Assembly (NCBI RefSeq): GCF_022045235.1
Contig: NW_027266275.1
Span: 73,966,001 to 74,030,000, forward strand
Direction of reading: 5' to 3'
Origin: Haliotis cracherodii
Lineage: Eukaryota
Length of the DNA stretch: 64,000 bases
Shown here: positions 26,038 to 52,355 of the stretch, one piece after another
Position numbering within the stretch: position 1 is the first letter of the stretch
Layout: each line of letters opens with the position of its first letter
The notes under the pieces: model-generated
Databases searched by the model: none
Seen by the model: only the letters and a program-made list of their open reading frames with translations
Told to the model about the DNA's origin: nothing
Program-made: the position numbers and the translations under genes

Positions 26038-26822
26038 TATACAGGGATGCGAGATGCTCATGGCTGAGAAACCAGGTTCCCCTTGGCCTATACAGGGATG
26101 TGACTCTCAGGGCAGAGGAACCAGGGTCTCCTTGGCCTTTACAGGGTTGTGACACTCAGGGCAGAGGAACCAGGTTCTCCTTGGACTTTACAGGGATGTG
26201 ACACTCAGGGCAGAGGAACCAGGGTCTCCCTGGACTTTACAGGGATGTGGGACTCAGGGCAGAGGAACCAGGTTTTCCTTGGCCTTTACAGGGTTGTGAC
26301 ACTCAGGGCAGAGGAACCAGGTTCTCCTTGGACTTTACAGGGTTGTGACACTCAGGGCAGAGGAACCAGGTTCTCCTTGGCCTTTACAGGGTTGTGACAC
26401 TCAGGGCAGAGGAACCAGGTTCTCCTTGGACTTTACAGGGTTGTGACACTCAGGGCAGAGGAACCAGGTTCTCCTTGGCCTTTACAGGGTTGTGACACTC
26501 AGGGCAGAGGAACCAGGGTCTCCTTGGATTATACAGTGATGTGACACTCAGGGCAGAGGAACCAGGGTCTCCTTGGACTTTAAACGGGTGGTGAGACTCG
26601 GGGCAGAGGAACCTGGTTCTTATATGGGGATGTGAGATGCCTAAGGCAGAGGAACCAGGTTCTCCTTGGCCTATACAGGGATGTGAGACTCAGGGCAGAG
26701 GAACCAGGTTCTCCTTGGCTTATACAGGGATGTGAAATGCTGAAGGCAAAGGAACCAGGTTCTCCTTGGATTATACAGGGATGTGACACTCTCAGGGCAG
26801 TGGAACCAGGTTCTCCTTGGCC
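26038..26822. repeat. 49-bp minisatellite containing the IFT56 exon-17b terminal codons and stop
   Basis: Minus-strand unit CCAAGGAGAACCTGGTTCCTCTGCCCTGAGTGTCACA(A/T)CCCTGTAAAG.; the first unit overlaps the CDS end. Confidence 0.92.
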
Positions 26823-26906
26823 CACTTCTTCATGGTCCTGATGATGTACTCCACCTGTGGGTTGCTGGTATTACGCAGCATGTTGATGACATCACGCAGC
26901 ATCTCC
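26792..26906 (-). CDS. IFT56: IFT56/TTC26 terminal exon 17b (distal alternative)
   Basis: tttTAG acceptor, phase matches exon 16; EMLRDVINMLRNTSNPQVEYIIRTMKKWAKENLVPLP*. Confidence 0.85.
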
Positions 26907-27287
26907 CTAAAACAGATCCCACATGACACAACATGACACAACACACAGTCAGCATGCAAACAGGACATGGACAAAGACTTGAAACAAATCAGAGGTTTGG
27001 TGGACAATCAGTTTCGATAGACAAAATAAGATGCATTGATTGAGACTTGTGTTGCTCCAATACAGCAGGAACCGGTACTACTCATGCTACACTCTACAAG
27101 TGTCCTGGAACTACTGCATCTAGCTGCTGAAGAAGCAGGTGATATTGTGATGGTGCCAAGGACGAAGCAAACAGTGCATGATGGGACATGTAATCAATGG
27201 TGAGTGAGGATGATAGAAATGTATTTACTAAGTGTGCCAGGGTACACACAGGGATGTTTAGTGTGCCCTTTGGAATAAAAACATGCC

Positions 27288-28272
27288 AAAAGAAATAATA
27301 CATAGTTTATCTTCAGACTCTGTGCACACTGTGACCCAAAAGAAGTGTACATTGTTCATCTTCAGATTTTGTGAATGCTGTGACCCAAAAGAAGTGTACA
27401 TTGTTTATCTTCAGGCTTTGTGAACACTGCGACCCAAAAGAAGTTGAGGTGAGGTGAAATGGAGCTTAACGCCGCGTCCAAGATTATTGCACTTATGTAG
27501 CGACGTGCATGCAAGTGTATCTGTGTGTGTGGCTGCTTGTACTAGTCTGGATTGATGCCGATTTATAGTGCTAGCTCACTGAGATACCATGCCACAGTTT
27601 AGCATTAATATCCCACTCAAACACAGTATACTGACTCCGAGCTAACCAGTCCTTGTTTTCTCCCCTTAATGCAGAGCGCCAGACAGGGTAACAACAAGTA
27701 CCATCTTTAAACGTCTCTTGGTATAACGCGGCCAGGGATCGAACCCCGGACCTTCCGCTCTCCGGACGCTCTACCACTAGACCATGGAGGCGCTCCACGC
27801 AAAAGAAGTAATACATAGTTTATCTTCAGACTCTGTTGTCACTGTGACCCAAAAGAAGTGTACATTGTTCATCTTGAGACTCTGTGGTCACTGTGACCTA
27901 AAAGAAGTGTACATAGTTTATCTTCAGACTTTGTGGACACTGTGACCCAAAAGAAGTGCACATTGTTTATCTTCAGACTTTGTGAACACTGTGACCCAAA
28001 AGAAGTGCACATTGTTTATCTTCAGACTTTGTGAACACTGTGACCCAAAAGAAGTGCACATTGTTTATCTTCAGACTTTGTGGTCACTGTGACCCAAAAG
28101 AAGTTTACATAGTTTATCTTCAGACTTTGTGAACACTGTGACCCAAAAGAAGTGCACATTGTTTATCTTCAGACTTTGTGAACACTGTGACCCAAAAGAA
28201 GTATACATAGTTTATCTTAAGACTTTGTGAACACAGTAATCCAAAACAAGAAATTCACAGTTTATCTTCAGA
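27288..28272. repeat. 49-bp minisatellite interrupted by a SINE
   Basis: Unit cattgtttatcttcagactttgtgaacactgtgacccaaaagaagtgca. Confidence 0.9.
27445..27799 (-). mobile_element. tRNA-headed MetaSINE-like element, family C
   Basis: Head gcctccatggtctagtgg...ggttcgatccc; core gactggttagctcggagtcag...agtgagctagcactataaa; flanking duplication caaaagaagt. Confidence 0.85.
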
Positions 28273-28554: not shown

Positions 28555-30590
28555 CTGGAGAGGCAAACAGGACAGCCAAGTTACTAGCAAGCCTGCGACC
28601 GTCATGCTGCGCGACCAACGCTGGAGGTGCAAGGATCCCTGCAGACTGACCTCAGCAAGTTACATCACTATTCCACCAATTTGAAGAGTTGAAGGATAAT
28701 TGTACACCAAGTCATCAGTAACTATCCTTGCACCTCCAGTGTAGGAGATCTATTGGGGGAGGTGTGGGAGGGGAGATTGTGCCTTACATTTAGGCAGAGG
28801 AAGAAAGTTAGAAGAGCATGATCAGTCATGTTTGTAATCATGGTTTTATAGGGTAGTCCAGAGGTCCTTGAGGTGATGAGCTCCATTGCTGAGTTCCATT
28901 TATTTCTAATTTTTACAGTGGCATTAGGACAAAGGCCCCATTGTGCCATTATTTTGAAAACTGCAAGGAATTAACAGAGATAGGCATTTGTGATGAAATA
29001 CCATCATAAGAATTTCATGAACATAATTCTAAATATGATGTATTAGCTGTATTGGAGCCATGGGAGACCAATAGTGGGGTATATAGCATCATGTTGTTTA
29101 ACTACACATTACTGGGCAGGGGAGGGGGAGGGAGAGTGGGGAGGGCGAGGGGAGAGAGAGGCTCTAGGGGAGTAGCTGTTAGTGAAAAGCAGGTATCAAG
29201 GGGAGGAGGCGAAGCAGTGGTTGTTAGTAGGGGTCAGTTGTCAATAAGGAGCTTATATAATTTATGATCCAAAACCAAAATAGACTGAACTACATACCTA
29301 CATGTACATGCATTTACTAAACCGGTAACGGTAGTGTTGGACTCAGACACACATGGTACAATATTTGGGAAAAGGGCTCAAAATGTCAAATCTCTCAGCA
29401 TTCTCTGCGTACAGTATCTGTCCACTGTGAGTGTCACCTTCCATGTCCCAACACTCCAGCTAGGTCCTACACAGGCTGAGAGTTATGGCCCTTATTACAC
29501 AAGGGTCAGCAGACACAGATGCTTGTGGCCAGTGATGGATCAACGTGTTAGTTAAATAACAAAACATGAATAAGAAGTACAACAGGTCAAATCTTTTTGT
29601 TTCTCTTTTTGGCTTCACTTGAAATACAATGTCCTCCATTATCCACCCATCATTACCCAATGTATTAAATCTCAGTTCTATTAAGATATATGCCCTGGAC
29701 ACATTTGCTACCATAACTTCGTTTCAGAAGCAAAACACAATCTTCATCTCTCATCATTAACTTGACACAGAATTTCTATTGCTCATGAGTGTAATCAGAT
29801 GTTAGTTCTGTTGTGTCATGCAAAGCGTAACATGAGCTGTCTTTACAAATCATCTTCCCGAAGCAAGGCTGAACTAGGCTGAACTGGGCTGGAATTATGG
29901 CGTTATACTCTGGCTGGACTAATGAGTCTATGCATAGTCCAATCAAAATTTTCTATTGCAGGATTTGAAAAACATGTGTACTGTCAACATGCTGTCAGCA
30001 GAAACTTTTGAAATCTTTTCATGTTTTTAATCAAGGTGGGTCACGTGATTTGATGCACTTCGAAAAGTAAGACCCGTTTCACTACAATATAGATCTTGAT
30101 TATCAATCAGATCGCCTTGACTAGGCGCTGCCATTTTGTTTGAAGCAAATGTAATTGATATGAGAGGTGGAATCTGATTGGTCAATAGGGACACAGAAAA
30201 GACATTCTTGTAATAGCCATTGGTGGCGCTACGATTAAGCCCAGAAATTCCAGCCTAGTTTGGTAAGGGTGGAAACTGGACCTTTTACAGTCAGTTAACT
30301 CCCTTGCCTTTTGAAGATGTTACAAATGGGCCCAGGGCATTTCCCAATAGAAAGGTGACATAATACACTGTAATCGAGGATGCCAGGCTACCTAACATGA
30401 CACTTTCTTGAGGGATGCCATTACACAATATCTGCATACCTGACATACCTTGCCCAATACTAAACGAGGTTATCTTGTGGCATCACAAGGGTCCTACTTC
30501 AATCCCTGGTTTCCTAGGTCCATGTGGTTCTATACAGGTTAGTCAGAGAGTACTGAGGTATTGACATGTGGTCATCATCTGTGAACTCAC

Positions 30591-30724
30591 CTCTGCTCAT
30601 GTCCGGCAATGATCATCTGGAACACGCCGACACAGGCGCCTCGCTTGCCCTCCCAGTACTCAGGGTTGGGGTCCAGGCGTTCCAGAACATCAAACGCTTT
30701 AGCTGCATAGTAGAACTGTCCCAT
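30591..30724 (-). CDS. IFT56: IFT56 exon 16
   Basis: [44 protein letters not shown](R); CAG acceptor, GTGAGT donor. Confidence 0.95.
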
Positions 30725-31350
30725 CTGGTGCAACACACAAGGACACATAGTAGTTAGCAGTTCTATATACTGGTAGTAGAACTGTCCCATCTGGTACAAC
30801 ACACAAGGACACATAGTAGTCAGCAGTTCTATATACTGGTAGTAGAACTGACCCATCTGGTGCAACACACAAGGACACATAGTACTTAGTAGTCAGCAGT
30901 TCTATATACTGGTAGTAGAACTGACCCATCTGGTGCAACACACAAGGACACATTGTAGTCAGCAGTTCTATATACTGGTAGTAGAACTGTCCCATCTGGT
31001 ACAACACACAAGGACACATAGTAGTCAGCAGTTCTATATACTGGTAGTAGAAATGACCCATCTGGTACAACACACAAGGACACATTGTAGTCAGCAGTTC
31101 TATATACTGGTAGTAGAACTGTCCCATCTGGTGCAACACACAAGGACACATAGTAGTCAGCAGTTCTATATACTGGTAGTAGAACTGACCAATCTGGTAC
31201 AACACACAAGGACACATAGTAGTCAGCAGTTCTATATACTGGTAGTAGAACTGACCAATCTGGTACAACACACAAGGACACATAGTAGTCAGCAGTTCTA
31301 TATACTGGTAGTAGAACTTTCCCATCTGGTGCAACACACAAGGACACATA
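30708..31350. repeat. 66-bp tandem array of the exon-16 acceptor plus its first ~6 codons
   Basis: CAG|AT junctions at 30724, 30790, 30856, 30929, 30995, 31061, 31127, 31193, 31259 and 31325. Confidence 0.95.
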
Positions 31351-31898
31351 GCACACAAGTGACATAGCAGTGAATGAGTGAGTGAGGTTTAATGCCGCTT
31401 TGAACAGTATTGTAGTTTAATTATCATAATTATGGCATGTCACCTTGATGTGGGAGGAAAGTCCGAACTGATGCAGGTCTTATCTATTACCACTTTGATA
31501 ACTAACAAGCAGGGGTATGGTACTGACAAACCAAGAATCAAAATCAGAGTCAATATGTATCTTAACCTATGATCCTAAGTTCCTGGCATGCCTTGGGGAC
31601 ACGACTCTGCACAAGAGAGGTGCCCGTGGAGACAGGCGAGAAAGAGGCATTGAGACAGAAGTGTACGATCCTCAGTCAGTGGTTCAACAAACTCCAAATC
31701 ACATCTACCAAAGTTGAGGCAAACATAATCATCAACATGATGAAGGGCACTGATGAAGAAGTCTCCTCAAGGCTGCCATACACACAATACACAAACTGTT
31801 AACCAATAACACATTGTAGTCAAACCAAATAAATTGGTGTCCTCTATCTTGATATTAGATACCCGACATCAAGCGTGAGTATGTCAGGTGCAACTTAC

Positions 31899-32005
31899 CT
31901 TGTAGCAGTCATTAGCAATGAGCTGCAGCAGGCTGAACGACTCCCCCGACGTCTCCATCTTCAAGTACAGCTCCCAGGCCAGCCTGGCCTTGTGGTTCAT
32001 AATAT
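31899..32005 (-). CDS. IFT56: IFT56 exon 15
   Basis: (Y)[35 protein letters not shown]; CAG / GTAAGT. Confidence 0.95.
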
Positions 32006-32084
32006 CTGGCAAATACATTGAGTGAGTGAGTTGGGTATGAACTGTTCTTTAGTCAAGGTCTGTGAGCTTAATGTGGGAGAAGGG

Positions 32085-32215
32085 GGCGAAGGGGTAGCGT
32101 AGTGGTAAAAGCAATCGCTTTCGGGTCCCCACACGAGTGCAATGTGTCTGGTGTTCCCACCATGATATTGCTTGAATATAATTGCTAAAAGTGTCGCAAA
32201 ACCATACTCACTCAC
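32085..32215 (+). mobile_element. Degenerate family B SINE
   Basis: ggggtagcgtagtggtaaaagc...gatattgcttgaat...aaaaccatactcactcac. Confidence 0.6.
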
Positions 32216-32569
32216 TGACGTGGGAAAGGTCATATGGATTCGGGATGTGGATGCTTAACACTGCGGTGAAATTGAGCATGGTCAGGTGCTGACAAACCTA
32301 GAATCCTTATCAGGGCAAATCTTGGTAGCTAGCCCATGGGAACAGGATTCTGGCATGCCAAAGGGAGGCAAATCTGCACAATGACTATTTCCTCCCATGG
32401 GTAACTGCCCCACCTGTGCTATCAAACATAGGATGGCAGAAACAGTAAAGAAGCCTGGGAAACATTTCAACATTTCTTCAGCTATCCAACATGAGCAGTG
32501 TAACCAAATTCACTGGTCATAAGACAATTGTCCAGATGAGTGATGGGGGTAGTGACAGTGATGACTTAC

Positions 32570-32639
32570 AACATCGGGCCAGCCAGCTGAGGTAGGTGTA
32601 GTCATTCTTCACCTTGTCGCTCTGTATCAGCATGAAGAT
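32570..32639 (-). CDS. IFT56: IFT56 exon 14
   Basis: IFMLIQSDKVKNDYTYLSWLARC; TTTCAG / GTAAGT. Confidence 0.93.
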
Positions 32640-33029
32640 CTGAAACACACAAGTATACTGAACAGCATTCACCTCCTACAGGAATCCTATCTCAAGTAGA
32701 GGTTGGTGCTCTACTGGATACCTTGCCATTTGACAACACAAGTCCCTCTGTGGGTCTACGATGTTTATTCTATGATATCACGCGGCTACACAATAACTAT
32801 GATCCAGTCTCCAGTAAGCATCTCCCTGTAGGTCGGCCAACCCCTCTCTCTGCTTTCCCAGGGTCAAGTCTGAGCAAATACAAAGCTTTGTCCATTTATC
32901 CCTAAGGGGTGAATCATGGTCAGACATGTCTTTCAGCCTGCTGTATCCAGCACCTCGTCCAGAATGTCACGCTTCAATGACTACACTGTGAATACCTAAA
33001 TCCCACCAACAATACTGGTCTCATACATA

Positions 33030-34192
33030 TAATCTGAAACACAGACATACATGACAGAATTCACCTGTCTCACACAGACACCATCTGAAACACAAACAGC
33101 ATTCACCTGTCTTACACATGCACCATCGGAGACACAAACAGCCTTCACCTGTCTCACACATACACCATCTGAAACACAAACAGCATTCACCTGTCTCACA
33201 CATGCACCATCTGAAACACAAACAGCATTCACCTGTCTCACACATGCACCATCTGAAACACAAACAGCATTCACCTGTCCCACACATGCACCATCTGAGA
33301 CACAGACAGCCTTCACCTGTCTCACACATGCACCATCTGAAACACAAACAGCATTCACCTGTCTCACACATGCACCATCTGAAACACAAACAGCATTCAC
33401 CTGTCTTACACATACACCATCTGAGACACAGACAGCATTCACCTGTCTCACACATGCACCATCTGAGACACAAACAGCATTCACCTGTCTCACACATGCA
33501 CCATCTGAGACACAAACAGCATTCACCTGTCTCACACTTGCACATCTGAGACACAGACAGCCTTCACCTGTCTCACACATGCACCATCTGAGACACAAAC
33601 AGCATTCACCTGTCTCACACTTGCACATCTGAGACACAGACAGCCTTCACCTGTCTCACACATGCACCATCTGAGACACAAACAGCATTCACCTGTCTCA
33701 CACTTGCACATCTGAGACACAGACAGCCTTCACCTGTCTCACACATGCACCATCTGAGACACAAACAGCATTCACCTGTCTCACACTTGCACATCTGAGA
33801 CACAGACAGCCTTCACCTGTCTCACACATGCACCATCTGAGACACAAACAGCATTCACCTGTCTCACACATGCACCATCTGCAACACAAACAGACACGTA
33901 GGCTTTCACCTGTCTCACACATACACCATCTGCAACACAAACAGACACGTAGGCATTCACCTGTATCACACATACACCATCTGCAACACAAACAGACACA
34001 TAGGCTTTCACCTGTCTCACACATACACCATCTGCAACTCAAACAGACACGTAGGCATTCACCTGTCTCACACATACACCATCTGCAACACAAACAGACA
34101 CGTAGCTTTCACCTGTCTCACACATACACCATCTGCAACACAAACAGACACGTAGGCATTCACCTGTCTCACACATGCACCATCTGAGACAC
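33030..34192. repeat. 41-48-bp minisatellite in IFT56 intron 13
   Basis: Unit acagcattcacctgtctcacacatgcaccatctgaaacacaa (42 bp); 83-bp dimer at 33532/33615/33698; longer variant units after ~33870. Confidence 0.93.
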
Positions 34193-34246
34193 ACATGGTA
34201 TTGGTATTGTCAATGTCAAGATGACCTGATACAAGACTCCACCCAC

Positions 34247-44593: not shown

Positions 44594-45439
44594 TGGACAA
44601 CTGGAAGCCAGGACTAAATTATCATTGGTTATTGGCAATGGACATTGGGTAAACGGGAGGCCGGGGGTAATTAACACTGATAGGTAAAAGAATAGAAATA
44701 GCAAAGGGCAAATAGAAGCCAGCCAGATTATAGGCACCTACAAGATCAATGCAATAAGTCCCAAGAACCAGGCAGATAGGTTCCCTAGTCACGGTTCATG
44801 GCTGGCTGGTGTCTCCTGATGTCAATGGCTTCTTGTAGTTTCCTTTGTCGCCAGTTGTTGTTGGTGGTAGACAGGACTTTGGTGGCTTCCCACATGATGT
44901 TATGGTTTTGGTGCTTGCGGATGTGTTCTGGAATAGCGGATTTCAGGCCTAATTTGTTGACAGAGGTATGATGTTTTTTATTCTGATGTTGAGGGGTCTG
45001 GGTCAAAACACATGATTGATACGGTCTGATAGTTACGATTGCCTTACATATTCTTTTAATGTAATGTTTGGTATTCGTTTTGGTGGTTCGCGTTGAAATT
45101 TCAATATTATATCCCAGGTATTGAAATAAACAAACGTCATTATTAATTTATTTTTATATATTTACTGACGCTTACAAAACGTTCCTACAATGATTCTAGT
45201 TTCTTCAAAAGGCACACACGACCCAGTGGTATAAGACGCCAGCTCTCGCCATGTCAGCTTGTATGTGATGGAAAACATTAGACTCACTTCCCTTCCCAGA
45301 GCTTGTTCCTTGCGGTCATACTTGTAATGTGCTGCTAAGTCAGACACGGATCCAGACACGACAAAGGGACAAAACTCTGCTTTTCTTCTTTCTCCTAAGA
45401 AAGTAAATTCGGTGTTCTGAAACACATTCAAGGTTGTGT

Positions 45440-48400
45440 CTACTGCCTTGTAACACAGATCGGGTTTTGTGATCTGTCTTGAAACACTCAGATCGGGTTG
45501 TGTGTTCTGCCTTGTAAACACTCAGATCGGGTTGTGTGTTCTGCCTTGTAACACAGATCGGGTTGTGTGTTCTGCCTTGTAAACACTCAGATCGGGTTGT
45601 GTGTTCTGCCTTGTAACACAGATCGGGTTGTGTGTTCTGCCTTGAAACACTCAGATCGGGTTGCGTGTTCTGCCTTGAAACACTCAGATCGGGTTGTGTG
45701 TTCTGCCTTGAAACACTCAGATCGGGTTGTGTGTTCTGTCTTGTAACACTCAGATCGGGTTGTGTGTTCTGTCTTGTAACACTCAGATCGGGTTGTGTGT
45801 TCTGTCTTGTAACACTCAGATCGGGTTGCGTGTTCTGCCTTGAAACACTCAGATCGGGTTGTGTGTTCTGCCTTATAACACTCAGATCGGGTTGTGTGTT
45901 CTTCCTTATAACACTCAGATCGGGTTGTGTGTTCTGCCTTATAACACAGATCGGGTTGTGTGTTCTGCCTTCTAACATTCACATCGGGTTGTGTGTTCTG
46001 GCTTGAAACACTCAGATCGGGTTGCGTGTTCTGCCTTGAAACACTCAGATCGGGTTGTGTGTTCTGTCTTGTAACACTCAGATCGGGTTGTGTGTTCTGC
46101 CTTATAACACAGATCGGGTTGTGTGTTCTGCCTTCTAACATTCACATCGGGTTGTGTGTTCTGCCTTGAAACACTCAGATCGGGTTGCGTGTTCTGCCTT
46201 GAAACACTCAGATCGGGTTGTGTGTTCTGCCTTATAACACTCAGATCGGGTTGTGTGTTCTGCCTTATAACACAGATCGGGTTGTGTGTTCTGCCTTCTA
46301 ACATTCACATCGGGTTGTGTGTTCTGCCTTGAAACACTCAGATCGGGTTGCGTGTTCTGCCTTGAAACACTCAGATCGGGTTGTGTGTTCTGTCTTGTAA
46401 CACTCAGATCGGGTTGTGTGTTCTGCCTTATAACACAGATCGGGTTGCATGTTCTGCCTTGAAACACTCAGATCGGGTTGTGTGTTCTGCCTTATAACAC
46501 TCAGATCGGGTTGTGTGTTCTGCCTTATAACACAGATCGGGTTGTGTGTTCTGCCTTCTAACATTCACATCGGGTTGTGTGTTCTGCCTTGAAACACTCA
46601 GATCGGGTTGCGTGTTCTGCCTTGAAACACTCAGATCGGGTTGTGTGTTCTGCCTTGAAACACTCAGATCGGGTTGTGTGTTCTGCCTTGTAGTAAGATC
46701 GGGTTGTGTGTTCTGCCTTGTAACACAGAACGGGTTGTGTGTTCTGTCTTGTAACACTCAGATCGGGTTGTGTGTTCTGCCTTGAAACACTCAGATCGGG
46801 TTGTGTGTTCTGCCTTGTAACGCTCAGATCGGGTTGTGTGTTCTGTCTTGTAACACAGATCGGGTTGTGTGTTCTGCCTTGTAACACTCAGATCGGGTTG
46901 TGTGTTCTGTCTTGTAACGCTCAGATCGGGTTGTGTGTTCTGCCTTGAAACGCTCAGATCGGGTTGTGTGTTCTGTCTTGTAACACTCAGATCGGGTTGT
47001 GTGTTCTGTCTTGTAACACTCAGATCGGGTTGTGTGTTCTGTCTTGTAACACAGATCGGGTTGTGTGTTCTGCCTTGTAACACAGAACGGGTTGTGTGTT
47101 CTGTCTTGTAACACTCAGATCGGGTTGTGTGTTCTGCCTTGAAACACTCAGATCGGGTTGTGTGTTCTGCCTTGTAGTAAGATCGGGTTGTGTGTTCTGC
47201 CTTGTAACACAGAACGGGTTGTGTGTTCTGTCTTGTAACACTCAGATCGGGTTGTGTGTTCTGCCTTGAAACACTCAGATCGGGTTGTGTGTTCTGCCTT
47301 GTAACGCTCAGATCGGGTTGTGTGTTCTGTCTTGTAACACAGATCGGGTTGTGTGTTCTGCCTTGTAACACTCAGATCGGGTTGTGTGTTCTGTCTTGTA
47401 ACGCTCAGATCGGGTTGTGTGTTCTGCCTTGAAACACTCAGATCGGGTTGTGTGTTCTGCCTTGTAACGCTCAGATCGGGTTGTGTGTTCTGTCTTGTAA
47501 CACAGATCGGGTTGTGTGTTCTGCCTTGTAACACTCAGATCGGGTTGTGTGTTCTGTCTTGTAACGCTCAGATCGGGTTGTGTGTTCTGTCTTGTAACAT
47601 TCACATCGGGTTGTGTGTTCTGCCTTGTAACACAGATCGGGTTGTGTGTTCTGCCTTGTAACACAGATCGGGTTGTGTGTTCTGTCTTGTAACGCTCAGA
47701 ACGGGTTGTGTGTTCTGTCTTGTAACATTCACATCGGGTTGTGTGTTCTGCCTTGTAACACAGATCGGGTTGTGTGTTCTGCCTTGTAACACAGATCGGG
47801 TTGTGTGTTCTGTCTTGTAACACTCAGATCGGGTTGCGTGTTCTGCCTTGTAACACTCAGATCGGGTTGTGTGTTCTGCCTTGTAACACAGATCGGGTTG
47901 TGTGTTCTGCCTTGTAAACACTCAGATCGGGTTGTGTGTTCTGCCTTGAAACACTCAGATCGGGTTGTGTGTTCTGTCTTGTAACACTCAGATCGGGTTG
48001 TGTGTTCTGCCTTGTAACACAGAACGGGTTGTGTGTTCTGTCTTGTAACACTCAGATCGGGTTGTGTGTTCTGTCTTGTAACACTCAGATCGGGTTGTGT
48101 GTTCTGTCTTGTAACACTCAGATCGGGTTGTGTGTTCTGTCTTGTAACACTCAGATCGGGTTGCGTGTTCTGCCTTGTAACACTCAGATCGGGTTGTGTG
48201 TTCTGCCTTGTAACACAGAACGGGTTGTGTGTTCTGTCTTGTAACACTCAGATCGGGTTGCGTGTTCTGCCTTGAAACACTCAGATCGGGTTGTGTGTTC
48301 TGCCTTATAACACAGAACGGGTTGTGTGTTCTGCCTTGAAACATTCACATCGGGTTGTGTGTTCTGCCTTGTAACACAGATCGGGTTGTGTGTTCTGCCT

Positions 48401-51400
48401 TGTAAACACTCAGATCGGGTTGTGTGTTCTGTCTTGTAACACAGATCGGGTTGTGTGTTCTGCCTTGAAACACTCAGATCGGGTTGTGTGTTCTGCCTTG
48501 TAACACTCAGATCGGGTTGCGTGTTCTGCCTTATAACACAGAACGGGTTGTGTGTTCTGCCTTGAAACACTCAGATCGGGTTGCGTGTTCTGCCTTGAAA
48601 CACTCAGATCGGGTTGTGTGTTCTGCCTTATAACACAGAACGGGTTGTGTGTTCTGCCTTGAAACATTCACATCGGGTTGTGTGTTCTGCCTTGAAACAC
48701 TTAGATCGGGTTGTGTGTTCTGCCTTGTAACACTCAGATCGGGTTGTGTGTTCTGCCTTGTAACACAGATCGGGTTGTGTGTTCTGCCTTGTAACACAGA
48801 TCGGGTTGTGTGTTCTGTCTTGTAACACTCAGATCGGGTTGTGTGTCCTGCCTTGAAACACTCAGATCGGGTTGTGTGTCCTGCCTTGAAACACTCAGAT
48901 CGGGTTGTGTGTCCTGCCTTGAAACACTCAGATCGGGTTGTGTGTTCTGCCTTGTAACACAGATCGGGTTGTGTGTTCTGCCTTGTAACACAGATCGGGT
49001 TGTGTGTTCTGCCTTGTAACACAGATCGGGTTGTGTGTTCTGCCTTGTAACACAGATCGGGTTGTGTGTTCTGCCTTGTAACACTCAGATCGGGTTGTGT
49101 GTTCTGCCTTGTAACACAGATCGGGTTGTGTGTTCTGCCTTGTAACACAGATCGGGTTGTGTGTTCTGCCTTGTAACACAGATCGGGTTGTGTGTTCTGC
49201 CTTGTAACACAGATCGGGTTGTGTGTTCTGCCTTGTAACACAGATCGGGTTGTGTGTTCTGCCTTGTAACACTCAGATCGGGTTGTGTGTTCTGTCTTGT
49301 AACACTCAGATCGGGTTGTGTGTTCTGCCTTGTAACACTCAGATCGGGTTGTGTGTTCTGTCTTGTAACACTCAGATCGGGTTGTGTGTCCTGCCTTGAA
49401 ACACTCAGATCGGGTTGTGTGTCCTGCCTTGAAACACTCAGATCGGGTTGTGTGTTCTGCCTTGTAACACAGATCGGGTTGTGTGTTCTGCCTTGTAACA
49501 CAGATTGGGTTGTGTGTTCTGCCTTGTAACACTCAGATCGGGTTGTGTGTTCTGTCTTGTAACACTCAGATCGGGTTGTGTGTTCTGTCTTGTAACACTC
49601 AGATCGGGTTGTGTGTCCTGCCTTGAAACACTCAGATCGGGTTGTGTGTTCTGCCTTATAACACAGAACGGGTTGTGTGTTCTGCCTTGTAACACTCAGA
49701 TCGGGTTGTGTGTTCTGTCTTGTAACACTCAGATCGGGTTGTGTGTCCTGCCTTGAAACACTCAGATCGGGTTGTGTGTTCTGCCTTGTAACACAGATCG
49801 GGTTGTGTGTTCTGCCTTGTAACACTCAGATCGGGTTGTGTGTTCTGTCTTGTAACACTCAGATCGGGTTGTGTGTTCTGCCTTGTAACACAGATCGGGT
49901 TGTGTGTCCTGCCTTGAAACACTCAGATCGGGTTGTGTGTCCTGCCTTGTAACACAGATCGGGTTGTGTGTTCTGTCTTGTAACACTCAGATCGGGTTGT
50001 GTGTTCTGCCTTGAAACACTCAGATCGGGTTGTGTGTTCTGTCTTGTAACACTCAGATCGGGTTGTGTGTTCTGCCTTGTAACACTCAGATCGGGTTGTG
50101 TGTTCTGTCTTGTAACACTCAGATCGGGTTGTGTGTCCTGCCTTGAAACACTCAGATCGGGTTGTGTGTCCTGCCTTGAAACACACAGATCGGGTTGTGT
50201 GTTCTGCCTTGTAACACTCAGATCGGGTTGTGTGTTCTGTCTTGTAACACTCAGATCGGGTTGTGTGTTCTGTCTTGTAACACTCAGATCGGGTTGTGTG
50301 TCCTGCCTTGAAACACTCAGATCGGGTTGTGTGTTCTGCCTTATAACACAGAACGGGTTGTGTGTTCTGCCTTGTAACACTCAGATCGGGTTGTGTGTTC
50401 TGTCTTGTAACACTCAGATCGGGTTGTGTGTTCTGCCTTGTAACACAGATCGGGTTGTGTGTCCTGCCTTGAAACACTCAGATCGGGTTGTGTGTCCTGC
50501 CTTGAAACACTCAGATCGGGTTGTGTGTTCTGCCTTGTAACACAGATCGGGTTGTGTGTTCTGCCTTGTAACACAGATCGGGTTGTGTGTTCTGCCTTGT
50601 AACACTCAGATCGGGTTGTGTGTTCTGTCTTGTAACACTCAGATCGGGTTGTGTGTTCTGCCTTGTAACACAGATCGGGTTGTGTGTTCTGTCTTGTAAC
50701 ACTCAGATCGGGTTGTGTGTTCTGCCTTGTAACACTCAGATCGGGTTGTGTGTCCTGCCTTGAAACACTCAGATCGGGTTGTGTGTTCTGCCTTGTAACA
50801 CAGATCGGGTTGTGTGTTCTGCCTTGTAACACAGATCGGGTTGTGTGTTCTGTCTTGTAACGCTCAGATCGGGTTGTGTGTTCTGCCTTGTAACACTCAG
50901 ATCGGGTTGTGTGTTCTGCCTTGTAACACAGATCGGGTTGTGTGTTCTGTCTTGTAACGCTCAGATCGGGTTGTGTGTTCTGTCTTGTAACACTCAGATC
51001 GGGTTGTGTGTTCTGCCTTGTAACACTCAGATCGGGTTGTGAGTTCTGCCTTGTAACACAGATCGGGTTGTGTGTTCTGTCTTGTAACACTCAGATCGGG
51101 TTGTGTGTTCTGCCTTGTAACACAGATCGGGTTGTGTGTTCTGTCTTGTAACACAGATCGGGTTGTGTGTTCTGTCTTGTAACACAGATCGGGTTGTGTG
51201 TTCTGTCTTGTAACACAGATCGGGTTGTGTGTCCTGCCTTGTAACACAAAACGGGTTGTGTGTTCTGTCTTGTAACACTCAGATCGGGTTGTGTGTTCTG
51301 CCTTGAAACACTCAGATCGGGTTGTGTGTTCTGCCTTGTAGTAAGATCGGGTTGTGTGTTCTGCCTTGTAACACTCAGATCGGGTTGTGTGTTCTGCCTT

Positions 51401-52355
51401 GTAACACAGATCGGGTTGTGTGTTCTGTCTTGTAACACAGATCGGGTTGTGTGTCCTGCCTTGTAACACAGAACGGGTTGTGTGTTCTGTCTTGTAACAC
51501 TCAGATCGGGTTGTGTGTTCTGCCTTGAAACACTCAGATCGGGTTGTGTGTTCTGCCTTGTAGTAAGATCGGGTTGTGTGTTTTGCCTTGTAGTAAGATC
51601 GGGTTGTGTGTTCTGCCTTGAAACACTCAGATCGGGTTGTGTGTTCTGCCTTGTAGTAAGATCGGGTTGTGTGTTTTGCCTTGTAGTAAGATCGGGTTGT
51701 GTGTTCTGCCTTGAAACACTCAGATCGGGTTGTGTGTTCTGTCTTGTAACACTCAGATCGGGCTGTGTGTCCTGCCTTGTAACACAGATCGGGTTGTGAG
51801 TTCTGTCTTGTAGTAAGATCGGGTTGTGTGTCCTGCCTTGTAGTAAGATCGGGTTGTGTGTTCTGCCTTGAAACACTCAGATCGGGTTGTGTGTTCTGCC
51901 TTGTAGTAAGATCGGGTTGTGTGTTTTGCCTTGTAGTAAGATCGGGTTGTGTGTTCTGCCTTGAAACACTCAGATCGGGTTGTGTGTTCTGTCTTGTAAC
52001 ACTCAGATCGGGTTGTGTGTCCTGCCTTGTAACACAGATCGGGTTGTGAGTTCTGTCTTGTAGTAAGATCGGGTTGTGTGTCCTGCCTTGTAGTAAGATC
52101 GGGTTGTGTGTTCTGCCTTGAAACACTCAGATCGGGTTGTGTGTTCTGCCTTGTAGTAAGATCGGGTTGTGTGTTTTGCCTTGTAGTAAGATCGGGTTGT
52201 GTGTTCTGCCTTGAAACACTCAGATCGGGTTGTGTGTTCTGCCTTGAAACACTCAGATCGGATTGTGTGTTCTGCCTTGTAACACTCAGATCGGGTTGTG
52301 TGTTCTGCCTTGAAACACAGATCGGGTTGTGTGTTCTGCCTTGTAACGCTCAGAT
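45440..52355. repeat. ~6.9-kb 30-34-bp minisatellite with higher-order structure
   Basis: Unit cagatcgggttgtgtgttctgccttgtaaca(ct). Confidence 0.97.

What the first reader, a model, noticed from the sequence alone, without database searches (positions are those of the whole stretch)
30708..31350. Ten tandem copies of a splice acceptor, with a frameshift separating productive from poison choices
Seen: the 66-bp unit holds a branch-like motif, pyrimidine tract, CAG and the first codons of exon 16 (MGQFYY). It is 22 stop-free codons, so acceptors at 30790 or 30856 would add 1-2 in-frame repeats ([22 protein letters not shown]). A 7-nt insertion (~30884-30890) shifts the seven upstream acceptors into a frame ending at 30699-30701, ~108 nt before the next junction, which fits the NMD rule. 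Only the unit feeding the canonical acceptor (30724) has CTAAC; the other internal units have CTGAC. Each unit also has an inverted repeat CAGTTCTA...TAGAACTG just after the decoy AG. Inference: the spliceosome must skip nine decoys, so copy number, the branch-point variant or the hairpin could tune IFT56 output.
Basis: partly seen in the sequence, partly recalled or inferred. Interest (0 to 1): 0.8.

Follow-up and report, generated by a model that had tools for sequence, protein, structure and literature searches.

The report
Splice-acceptor "mirage" minisatellite in abalone IFT56
An intron of a sea-snail cilium gene ends in ten head-to-tail copies of its own intron-end/exon-start junction, a repeat type already known from lancelets and mirrored in human F7, and nothing yet shows that the extra splice sites are used.

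Summary
A 66-bp minisatellite (30708-31351, 9.7 copies, 93% matches) sits on the minus-strand IFT56 gene. Each unit carries a branch-like motif, a pyrimidine-rich tract, CAG and the first 17 nt of the penultimate coding exon, which gives ten near-identical acceptors. Two of them are in frame (+22 or +44 aa). The seven upstream ones are shifted by a 7-nt insertion onto a TAA 108 nt before the next junction. Only the last unit has CTAAC.

The interpretation (tuning of IFT56 output) is untested. My single read-laying run was swamped by flanking high-copy repeats and showed no exon 15 to exon 16 joint.

[quoted passage not shown] Human F7, 6-16 and CBS are the donor-side mirror. In those cases the genuine site, or the copies nearest the exon, are used. 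The window is 38% minisatellite, and this scan already holds 34 notes with the words "mirage minisatellite" for this same genome, on other DNA.

Most likely this is a neutral slippage product, with splicing at the exon-proximal acceptor. It is a new member of a known kind, useful mainly as a natural model for 3' splice-site choice.

The parts
30708..31351 (-). 66-bp minisatellite, 9.7 copies. Each unit is the last 49 nt of the intron (branch motif, pyrimidine/TG-rich tract, CAG) plus the first 17 nt of the exon.
   Evidence: TRF; unit table; unique in the genome
30591..30724 (-). Genuine penultimate coding exon of IFT56 (134 nt, [44 protein letters not shown]), acceptor CAG at 30727-30725, donor gtgagt from 30590
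   Evidence: PDB 8bd7_E 'Intraflagellar transport protein 56', E 2e-16. Contig joint 30590 to 26905 in runs X1 and X3.
31899..32015 (-). Upstream coding exon ending ..LIANDCYK, donor gtaagt from 31898, phase 0. The start coordinate is read by eye from ..gccag|ATATT.
   Evidence: tblastn of P0189/P0225, 32003-31893
30725..30790 (-). Last decoy unit. It supplies the branch motif CTAAC (A 30 nt before base 30724) and the tract of the genuine acceptor. Its own start, 30790, is the first in-frame decoy (+22 aa).
30791..30856 (-). Second in-frame decoy unit (+44 aa if 30856 were used), with CTGAC
30857..30929 (-). 73-nt unit with the 7-nt insertion (about 30884-30890). It puts all acceptors from 30929 upward out of frame.
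30930..31325 (-). Six further decoy units (acceptors at 31325, 31259, 31193, 31127, 31061, 30995). Any of them would read into TAA at 30701-30699.
30699..30701 (-). TAA reached in the shifted frame, 108 nt before the exon's last base

Best explanation
This is an acceptor-side 'mirage' minisatellite. A 66-bp piece spanning the 3' end of the intron and the first 17 nt of the penultimate IFT56 coding exon was copied head to tail into the intron, by replication slippage or unequal exchange, in a genome that makes minisatellites very readily. It later grew by one- and two-unit steps. It has no designed function.

The spliceosome meets ten near-identical branch/tract/AG modules and mostly joins the upstream exon to the exon-proximal (last) one. 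Only that one is followed by the real exon body and by a donor 134 nt downstream (exon definition). The decoys are silent or give minor products: +22 or +44 aa from the two nearest, and NMD-prone RNAs from the seven upstream.

Shown: the anatomy, the frames, uniqueness in the genome, gene identity, and that the exon's donor is spliced to a terminal exon in RNA-like runs. Inferred: how the array arose, and which acceptor is used.
For: - Anatomy and frames.
- Gene identity: 8bd7_E, E 2e-16; 13 tblastn pieces of P0189 between 41269 and 30596.
- Background: 17 arrays cover 24,599 of 64,000 bases (38%), five of them inside the IFT56 span. A second array in intron 13 matches the exon-14 acceptor region.
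- Unit variants shared between neighbours and between units two apart (T3 and T6 in 31259/31193; A42 in 31127/30995) fit growth by slippage. The edge units carry private variants.
- Published kin: amphioxus mirages, including an acceptor-side one (globin BflGb6), where RT-PCR suggests regular splicing is not disturbed (PMC3087553, passages; PMC3902484, passage). In human F7 only the exon-proximal copy is used; in 6-16 and CBS only that one and the two nearest (PMC1557585, abstract and passages).
- No protein among 664 candidates of the 5.8-billion collection holds the unit peptide, and none of the best 120 of 780 hits does.
- Weak hint from depth: in three RNA-like runs the array bins stand at 0-21.6, against 250-512 for the terminal-exon bin. 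The tool itself warns against reading contig depth.
- In another organism with a small array at the same junction (P0001), a cDNA-like contig with a near-identical exon (98% over 46 residues) shows the plain CYK|MGQFYYSAKAF junction (L006). That the two are the same species is not shown.
Against: - No read or contig shown to me crosses from 31899 to any acceptor. One search listed 15 of 703 joints, and none of them was this one.
- Contigs that resemble human DNA are silently dropped. The conserved exon itself has almost no depth (0.15 in X7, while the terminal-exon bin has 271), so the depth argument lacks a sound internal control.
- The protein collection may simply lack this species. No hit among those listed carries its QMIIAGHEQ ending.
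- Classic duplicated-site experiments reported use of the 'proximal copy' (cited in PMC1557585). If that means donor-proximal, it would favour the first decoy.
- All ten sites are almost equally strong by sequence, so silence of the decoys is not self-evident.
Confidence: 0.72

Rival explanations
1. One reading: the decoys are really used, and copy number, the CTAAC/CTGAC branch variant or the hairpin sets the ratio of productive to NMD-bound RNA. The array would then tune IFT56 dosage.
For: There are ten complete modules of near-equal strength. The premature stop lies 108 nt before the last junction, which fits the EJC-type NMD rule. Only the last unit has CTAAC. Decoys are not excluded by my read data.
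Against: No usage was seen. The hairpin is not better than shuffles. CTGAC also fits yUnAy (recalled). Edge units commonly keep private variants (PMC3087553). Published analogues are silent or nearly so. The same genome is full of such arrays according to the scan's notes (untested here), which argues for a mutational by-product rather than a device of this gene.
Confidence: 0.07
2. As in human 6-16 and CBS, the one or two exon-proximal decoys (30790, 30856) are used alongside the genuine site. This would give minor IFT56 isoforms with a 22- or 44-residue insert after ..CYK.
For: Exactly these two decoys are in frame and stop-free. They would give exons of 200 and 266 nt, a normal size. [quoted passage not shown]
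Against: No protein with the unit peptide was found (0 of 664 candidates; none in the best 120). The insert is hydrophobic and would interrupt a conserved helical-repeat region (inference). The in-frame property is expected by chance, since 3 of 6 frames are open.
Confidence: 0.15
3. Assembly artefact: the array, or its copy number, was produced by mis-assembly of a shorter repeat.
For: Short-read contigs of the DNA-like run X19 stop at both edges (30749 and 31388). None spans the array, so the copy number is unconfirmed. A mis-assembled mirage is on record for the amphioxus draft genome (PMC3087553).
Against: The units differ by specific substitutions and one 7-nt insertion in an ordered pattern. 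Contigs at least 90% alike lie in all three array bins of X19, at depths 22.8-97.9. Sixteen other arrays lie in the same window.
Confidence: 0.04

Closest known systems
'Mirage' minisatellites of amphioxus (Adh3; globin BflGb6 and BflGb9; troponin C; PGBD5)
   Same: Minisatellite-like tandem duplications that span an intron/exon boundary of the host gene. BflGb6 duplicates the 3' end of an intron plus the 5' part of the next exon, the same topology as here. The units carry AG/GT signals, yet RT-PCR suggests regular splicing. Edge units are excluded from homogenisation. (PMC3087553 passages; PMC3902484 passage.)
   Different: The host is a mollusc, not a cephalochordate. The unit is 66 bp (Adh3 10-72 bp, BflGb6 150-160 bp), with 9.7 copies against 3-6 in BflGb6. 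Splicing and length polymorphism were not tested here. My searches found no paper describing mirages in molluscs. The original Adh3 paper (PMC117041) is not held.
Human F7 IVS7 37-bp VNTR and kin (6-16/IFI6, CBS intron 13, LMNB2, PDGF)
   Same: A minisatellite in which one monomer spans an exon/intron boundary, so an identical splice site is reiterated 5-26 times. Only the exon-proximal site (F7, LMNB2, PDGF), or that one plus the two nearest (6-16, CBS), is used. It has served as a natural model for splice-site choice. (PMC1557585, abstract and passages.)
   Different: All of these are donor-side. Here it is the acceptor, with a complete branch/tract/AG module per unit, so the selection step (U2AF/SF1/U2 rather than U1) differs.
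Unproductive splicing coupled to NMD, and decoy 3' splice sites (recalled, e.g. the caspase-2 In100 decoy acceptor)
   Same: Alternative acceptors that would put a stop more than 50 nt before the last junction. Decoy acceptors could engage U2 without product.
   Different: Known regulated cases are conserved single sites with shown usage. Here neither usage nor conservation is shown.

Membership tests
Mirage minisatellite (tandem duplication of an exon/intron boundary) | Tandem array with a minisatellite-size unit (published units 10-160 bp) | tested here: met
   Period 66, 9.7 copies, 93% matches
Mirage minisatellite (tandem duplication of an exon/intron boundary) | Each unit contains part of the host gene's own exon plus the adjoining intron end with its splice signal | tested here: met
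   17 nt of exon start plus 49 nt of intron end with CAG in all units; exon identified as IFT56
Mirage minisatellite (tandem duplication of an exon/intron boundary) | The array is continuous with the genuine junction (the terminal copy is the real boundary) | tested here: met
   The array ends at 30708, 17 nt inside the exon that starts at 30724
Mirage minisatellite (tandem duplication of an exon/intron boundary) | Regular splicing not disturbed; extra sites silent | tested here: inconclusive
   One search showed no exon 15/16 joint (15 of 703 joints listed). Array bins are at or below intron-like depth in X1 and X7; in X3 one bin, beside a high-copy repeat, reaches 21.6. The tool warns that depth is unreliable.
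Mirage minisatellite (tandem duplication of an exon/intron boundary) | Length instability or polymorphism | not testable with these tools
   Short-read contigs break at the array edges; no long reads were available
F7-type reiterated donor pseudo-sites | The repeated site is the 5' splice site, with the first monomer on the exon/intron boundary | tested here: not met
   The repeated site is the 3' splice site and the last monomer lies on the boundary. It works like a mirror image but is not a member.
Regulated unproductive splicing (AS-NMD) | The alternative site gives a stop more than 50-55 nt upstream of the last exon junction | tested here: met
   108 nt, for the seven upstream acceptors
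Regulated unproductive splicing (AS-NMD) | The alternative site is demonstrably used and its product rises when NMD is blocked | not testable with these tools
   No raw RNA reads were laid; the one read-laying run is spent
NAGNAG / short-distance tandem acceptors | Acceptors a few nucleotides apart that share one branch point and tract | tested here: not met
   Spacing is 66 or 73 nt and each acceptor has its own branch motif

The most novel reading that the evidence does not exclude
The decoys are not silent. The exon-proximal ones add 22 or 44 residues, the upstream ones feed NMD, and so copy number and the CTAAC/CTGAC allele set IFT56 dosage between individuals.

In addition, this particular junction may be a recurrent birthplace of such arrays. 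Independent small arrays sit on the same IFT56 junction in a metagenome animal (L031, 35 bp x 3, exon breakpoint 18 nt against 17 nt here) and in a ctenophore-like sequence (P0001, 42 nt x 4).
Probability: 0.1. Interest if true: 0.6.

Novelty: new member of a known kind. Interest (0 to 1): 0.3.

Why it matters
Its value is as a natural experiment, not as a new principle. Ten near-identical, complete 3' splice-site modules 66 nt apart, upstream of one real exon, are the acceptor-side counterpart of the human F7 array that was used to work out 5' splice-site choice. Counting junctions here would show directly whether position relative to the exon (exon definition), order of transcription, or a single branch-point base decides among equal acceptors in a mollusc.

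It also warns annotators of abalone genomes that gene models can pick a wrong copy. Together with the scan's other notes on this genome, it adds to a picture of minisatellites that often arise on splice junctions.

Tried and rejected
- Read evidence. I chose a wide stretch to include the flanking exons. High-copy repeats at about 27347-27943, 29735-30331, 31327-31525 and 32123-32321 filled the tables. Only 15 of 703 joints were printed, and the exon 15/16 joint was not among them. This was my main failure; a narrow stretch would have been better.
- Protein route to transcripts. One search (88-aa in-frame reading, 780 hits, best 120 listed) gave no hit with the unit peptide and none from this species. 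One search (P0189 region 440-560, 1330 hits, best 120 listed) gave no close relative; the best total identity to the window's exons was about 77-79%. One search (four units, 88 aa) gave 0 of 664 candidates at E <= 1.
- Retrocopy as a fossil of the splice choice: none found. The exon occurs once in the genome.
- Hairpin as a regulator: rejected (not better than shuffles).
- Stop-free unit as a sign of selection: rejected (3 of 6 frames open).
- Hot-spot idea. Among 80 metagenome loci with this exon, 1 has an acceptor-spanning array and 0 a donor-spanning one. That is too few to claim more than a lead.
- Ancestral state of the junction: it could not be reconstructed without a relative's DNA.
- Supplements were closed. 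The alignments of BflGb6 mirage units (Additional files of PMC3087553) might bear on how alike the cases are.
Exons were searched singly and the joined step was left out.

Full report
WHAT IS THERE

The gene lies on the minus strand. TRF reports one array at 30708-31351 with period 66, 9.7 copies, 93% matches and 2% indels.

Read in gene orientation, every unit is the last 49 nt of the intron followed by the first 17 nt of the next exon (ATGGGACAGTTCTACTA). The intron part is ..CCAGTATATAGAACTGCTGACTACTATGTGTCCTTGTGTGTTG(C/T)ACCAG.

A script found ten CCAG|AT(G/T)GG acceptors. Their first exonic bases are 31325, 31259, 31193, 31127, 31061, 30995, 30929, 30856, 30790 and 30724.

The genuine exon runs 30724-30591 (134 nt) and is followed by gtgagt. 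The upstream exon ends ..LIANDCYK at 31899 and is followed by gtaagt, so the intron is phase 0.

Gene identity:
- The exon peptide matches chain 8bd7_E, 'Intraflagellar transport protein 56', at E 2e-16.
- Two full-length relatives from the representative library (P0189, P0225) map by tblastn to a series of exons from about 41269 down to 30596.
This exon is therefore the penultimate coding exon. I could not verify the number 16.

All of them check out.
- Frames: from 30790 or 30856 the reading stays in frame and stop-free, adding 22 or 44 residues. From the seven upstream acceptors the 73-nt unit (7 extra nt) shifts the frame, and the first stop is TAA at 30701-30699, 108 nt before the exon's last base.
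- Branch motif: CTAAC is present only in the unit that feeds 30724. The other eight internal units have CTGAC, and the first acceptor is fed by non-repeat flank. The branch A lies 30 nt before the exon, with no intervening AG.
- Inverted repeat: it exists and forms the predicted hairpin, but the units fold no better than dinucleotide shuffles (z +1.15, +0.77, +1.36).
- Open frame: this is not remarkable, because three of the six frames of the consensus unit are open.

IS IT REAL, AND IS IT MORE THAN CHANCE?

- The unit is found only at this locus in the 1.18-Gb, 80-contig assembly. The exon occurs once, with no retrocopy.
- The units are not identical copies. They carry an ordered pattern of substitutions shared by neighbours or by units two apart, plus one 7-nt insertion. 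That looks like array evolution rather than assembly stutter.
- Contigs of the DNA-like run X19 lie on all three array bins (depth 22.8-97.9, against about 32-35 beside it). They break at 30749 and 31388, as short-read graphs do at repeats. The copy number itself is therefore not independently confirmed.

CONTEXT

The window is extraordinarily rich in minisatellites. Seventeen arrays cover 24,599 of 64,000 bases (38%), and five of them lie inside the IFT56 span.

One of these, in intron 13 (33054-34193), has units that align with the sequence just before exon 14, including its TGTGTTTCAG|AT acceptor. Another abuts the end of terminal exon 17b (note s1-836973; array 26040-26822).

The scan's own notebook holds 34 notes with the words 'mirage minisatellite' for this same genome, on other DNA. 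Those are unchecked AI notes. I took from them the word 'mirage' and the lead to the literature, which I then checked myself.

WHAT IS KNOWN

Amphioxus mirages (PMC3087553, abstract and passages):
[quoted passage not shown] This is the topology seen here.
- It also reports that cluster boundaries are excluded from homogenisation.

PMC3902484 (one passage) adds troponin C and PGBD5, and says these repeats do not generate aberrant mRNAs.

Human donor-side mirror (PMC1557585, abstract, outline and passages):
- The cases are F7 IVS7 (37 bp, 5-9 copies), 6-16 (25 pseudo-sites), CBS, LMNB2 and PDGF.
- Only the authentic exon-proximal donor is used in F7, LMNB2 and PDGF.
- In 6-16 and CBS the authentic donor and the two nearest pseudo-sites are used.

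My searches for an acceptor-side array outside amphioxus, or for mirages in molluscs, found nothing further. One abalone paper reports polymorphic intronic minisatellites, but not on junctions (PMC6905558, passages). The original Adh3 paper is not held.

WHICH ACCEPTOR IS USED?

This is the crux, and I could not settle it.

Run search: it listed 22 runs, none on record as RNA.

The single read-laying run:
- I used a wide stretch, and four high-copy repeats swamped the tables.
- The one IFT56 joint printed is 30590 to 26905 (ends CT..AC on the plus strand, that is GT..AG on the gene strand), in X1 (depth 152) and X3 (depth 43). It shows that the exon's donor is spliced to terminal exon 17b.
- No joint from 31899 was among the 15 of 703 printed.

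Depth, read with the tool's own warning that contig depth is unreliable:

| Run | Three array bins | Terminal-exon bin 26750-26948 | Single-copy intron contigs |
|---|---|---|---|
| X1 | 6.2 / 2.0 / 3.5 | 250 | 4-14 |
| X3 | 3.4 / 0 / 21.6 | 512 | 2.6-4.5 |
| X7 | 0 / 0 / 0 | 271 | 2-5 |

- In X3 the last array bin borders a repeat.
- The pattern fits an array that is spliced out.
- However, the genuine exon's own bin is also nearly empty (0.15 in X7), presumably because contigs resembling human DNA are dropped. The control therefore fails, and use of the nearest decoys cannot be excluded.

Protein route:
- None of the best 120 of 780 hits to the in-frame 88-aa reading holds the unit peptide.
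- A search with four units alone gave 0 of 664 candidates.
- No listed hit carries this species' own exon ending, so the species may simply be absent from that collection.

MOST LIKELY MECHANISM

I commit (0.72) to a neutral, slippage-born mirage minisatellite, with splicing mainly at the last copy. Only that copy is followed by the real exon body and by a donor 134 nt away. The published analogues support this choice.

The two nearest decoys may be used at a low level, as in 6-16 and CBS (0.15). Artefact: 0.04.

The CTAAC/CTGAC difference is a single A/G change next to the branch A. Both forms fit the metazoan yUnAy consensus (recalled, not tested), and private variants in edge units are expected.

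A SIDE RESULT

The same IFT56 junction carries small independent arrays elsewhere.
- Protein P0001 (JGI, 87 aa, one 1069-nt contig) reads as four copies of a 14-residue unit made of the exon start plus a short intron end. The exon part of P0001 is the same as in a Pleurobrachia bachei entry (P0100).
- A cDNA-like contig with a near-identical exon shows the plain CYK|MGQFYYSAKAF junction (L006). That it is the same species is not shown.
- Locus L031 has a 35-bp unit in three copies: 17 nt of intron end plus 18 nt of exon, almost the same exon breakpoint as the 17 nt here.
- In the sample of 80 metagenome loci holding this exon, that is 1 acceptor-spanning array and 0 donor-spanning arrays. This is too few to claim a hot spot, but it is a lead.

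VERDICT

This is a new member of a known kind, and the scan has found the same kind before on other DNA of this genome.

Noticed in passing
window 1-64000: Seventeen distinct minisatellite arrays (periods 21-78 and higher-order forms) cover 24,599 bases, 38% of the window. The largest is 45432-52355 (33 bp x 215).
   Followed up: partly
window 33054-34193 and 32632-32686: The intron-13 array (42- and 51-bp units) matches the sequence just before exon 14, including its acceptor (AGGTGAATGCTGTT...TGTGTTTCAG|AT), though it now lies about 400 nt away. Each unit holds both an acceptor-like (TTGCAG|AT) and a donor-like (CAG|GTGAAT) motif. This is probably a second junction-derived array in the same gene.
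   Followed up: partly
P0001 (protein, JGI contig of 1069 nt); L006: Another organism has four tandem copies of a 42-nt unit (exon start plus 15 nt of intron end) at the same IFT56 junction. The exon part of P0001 is identical in a Pleurobrachia bachei entry (P0100). The cDNA-like contig L006, with a near-identical exon, shows the normal junction.
   Followed up: partly
L031:119-222: A metagenome contig (Ga0224511_10029172) carries a 35-bp x 3 array on the same IFT56 acceptor, with an exon breakpoint of 18 nt against 17 nt in the window. It is the only one of 80 loci with an array across either boundary of this exon.
   Followed up: partly
L080:918-1050: In an organism without this intron (CYK and MGHFFY are contiguous), about 115 nt of coding sequence around the same place is duplicated in tandem, and the first copy is degenerate.
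   Followed up: no
window 31369-31480, 27347-27943, 29735-30331, 32123-32321: Very high-copy interspersed repeats (contig depths of 10^4 to 10^6 in all four runs). One of them lies only about 18 nt upstream of the array's first unit.
   Followed up: no
window 27377-28140: One contig of run X3 (record 17, 941 nt) joins 27376 to 28141 and so lacks about 764 nt that the window has there (a high-copy repeat and part of a 49-bp array). This is either an insertion/deletion difference between organisms or a splice within the terminal-exon region.
   Followed up: no
window 30590 / 26905: Contigs of X1 and X3 join the exon's donor directly to the distal terminal exon (skipping 3684 nt, GT..AG on the gene strand).
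   Followed up: partly
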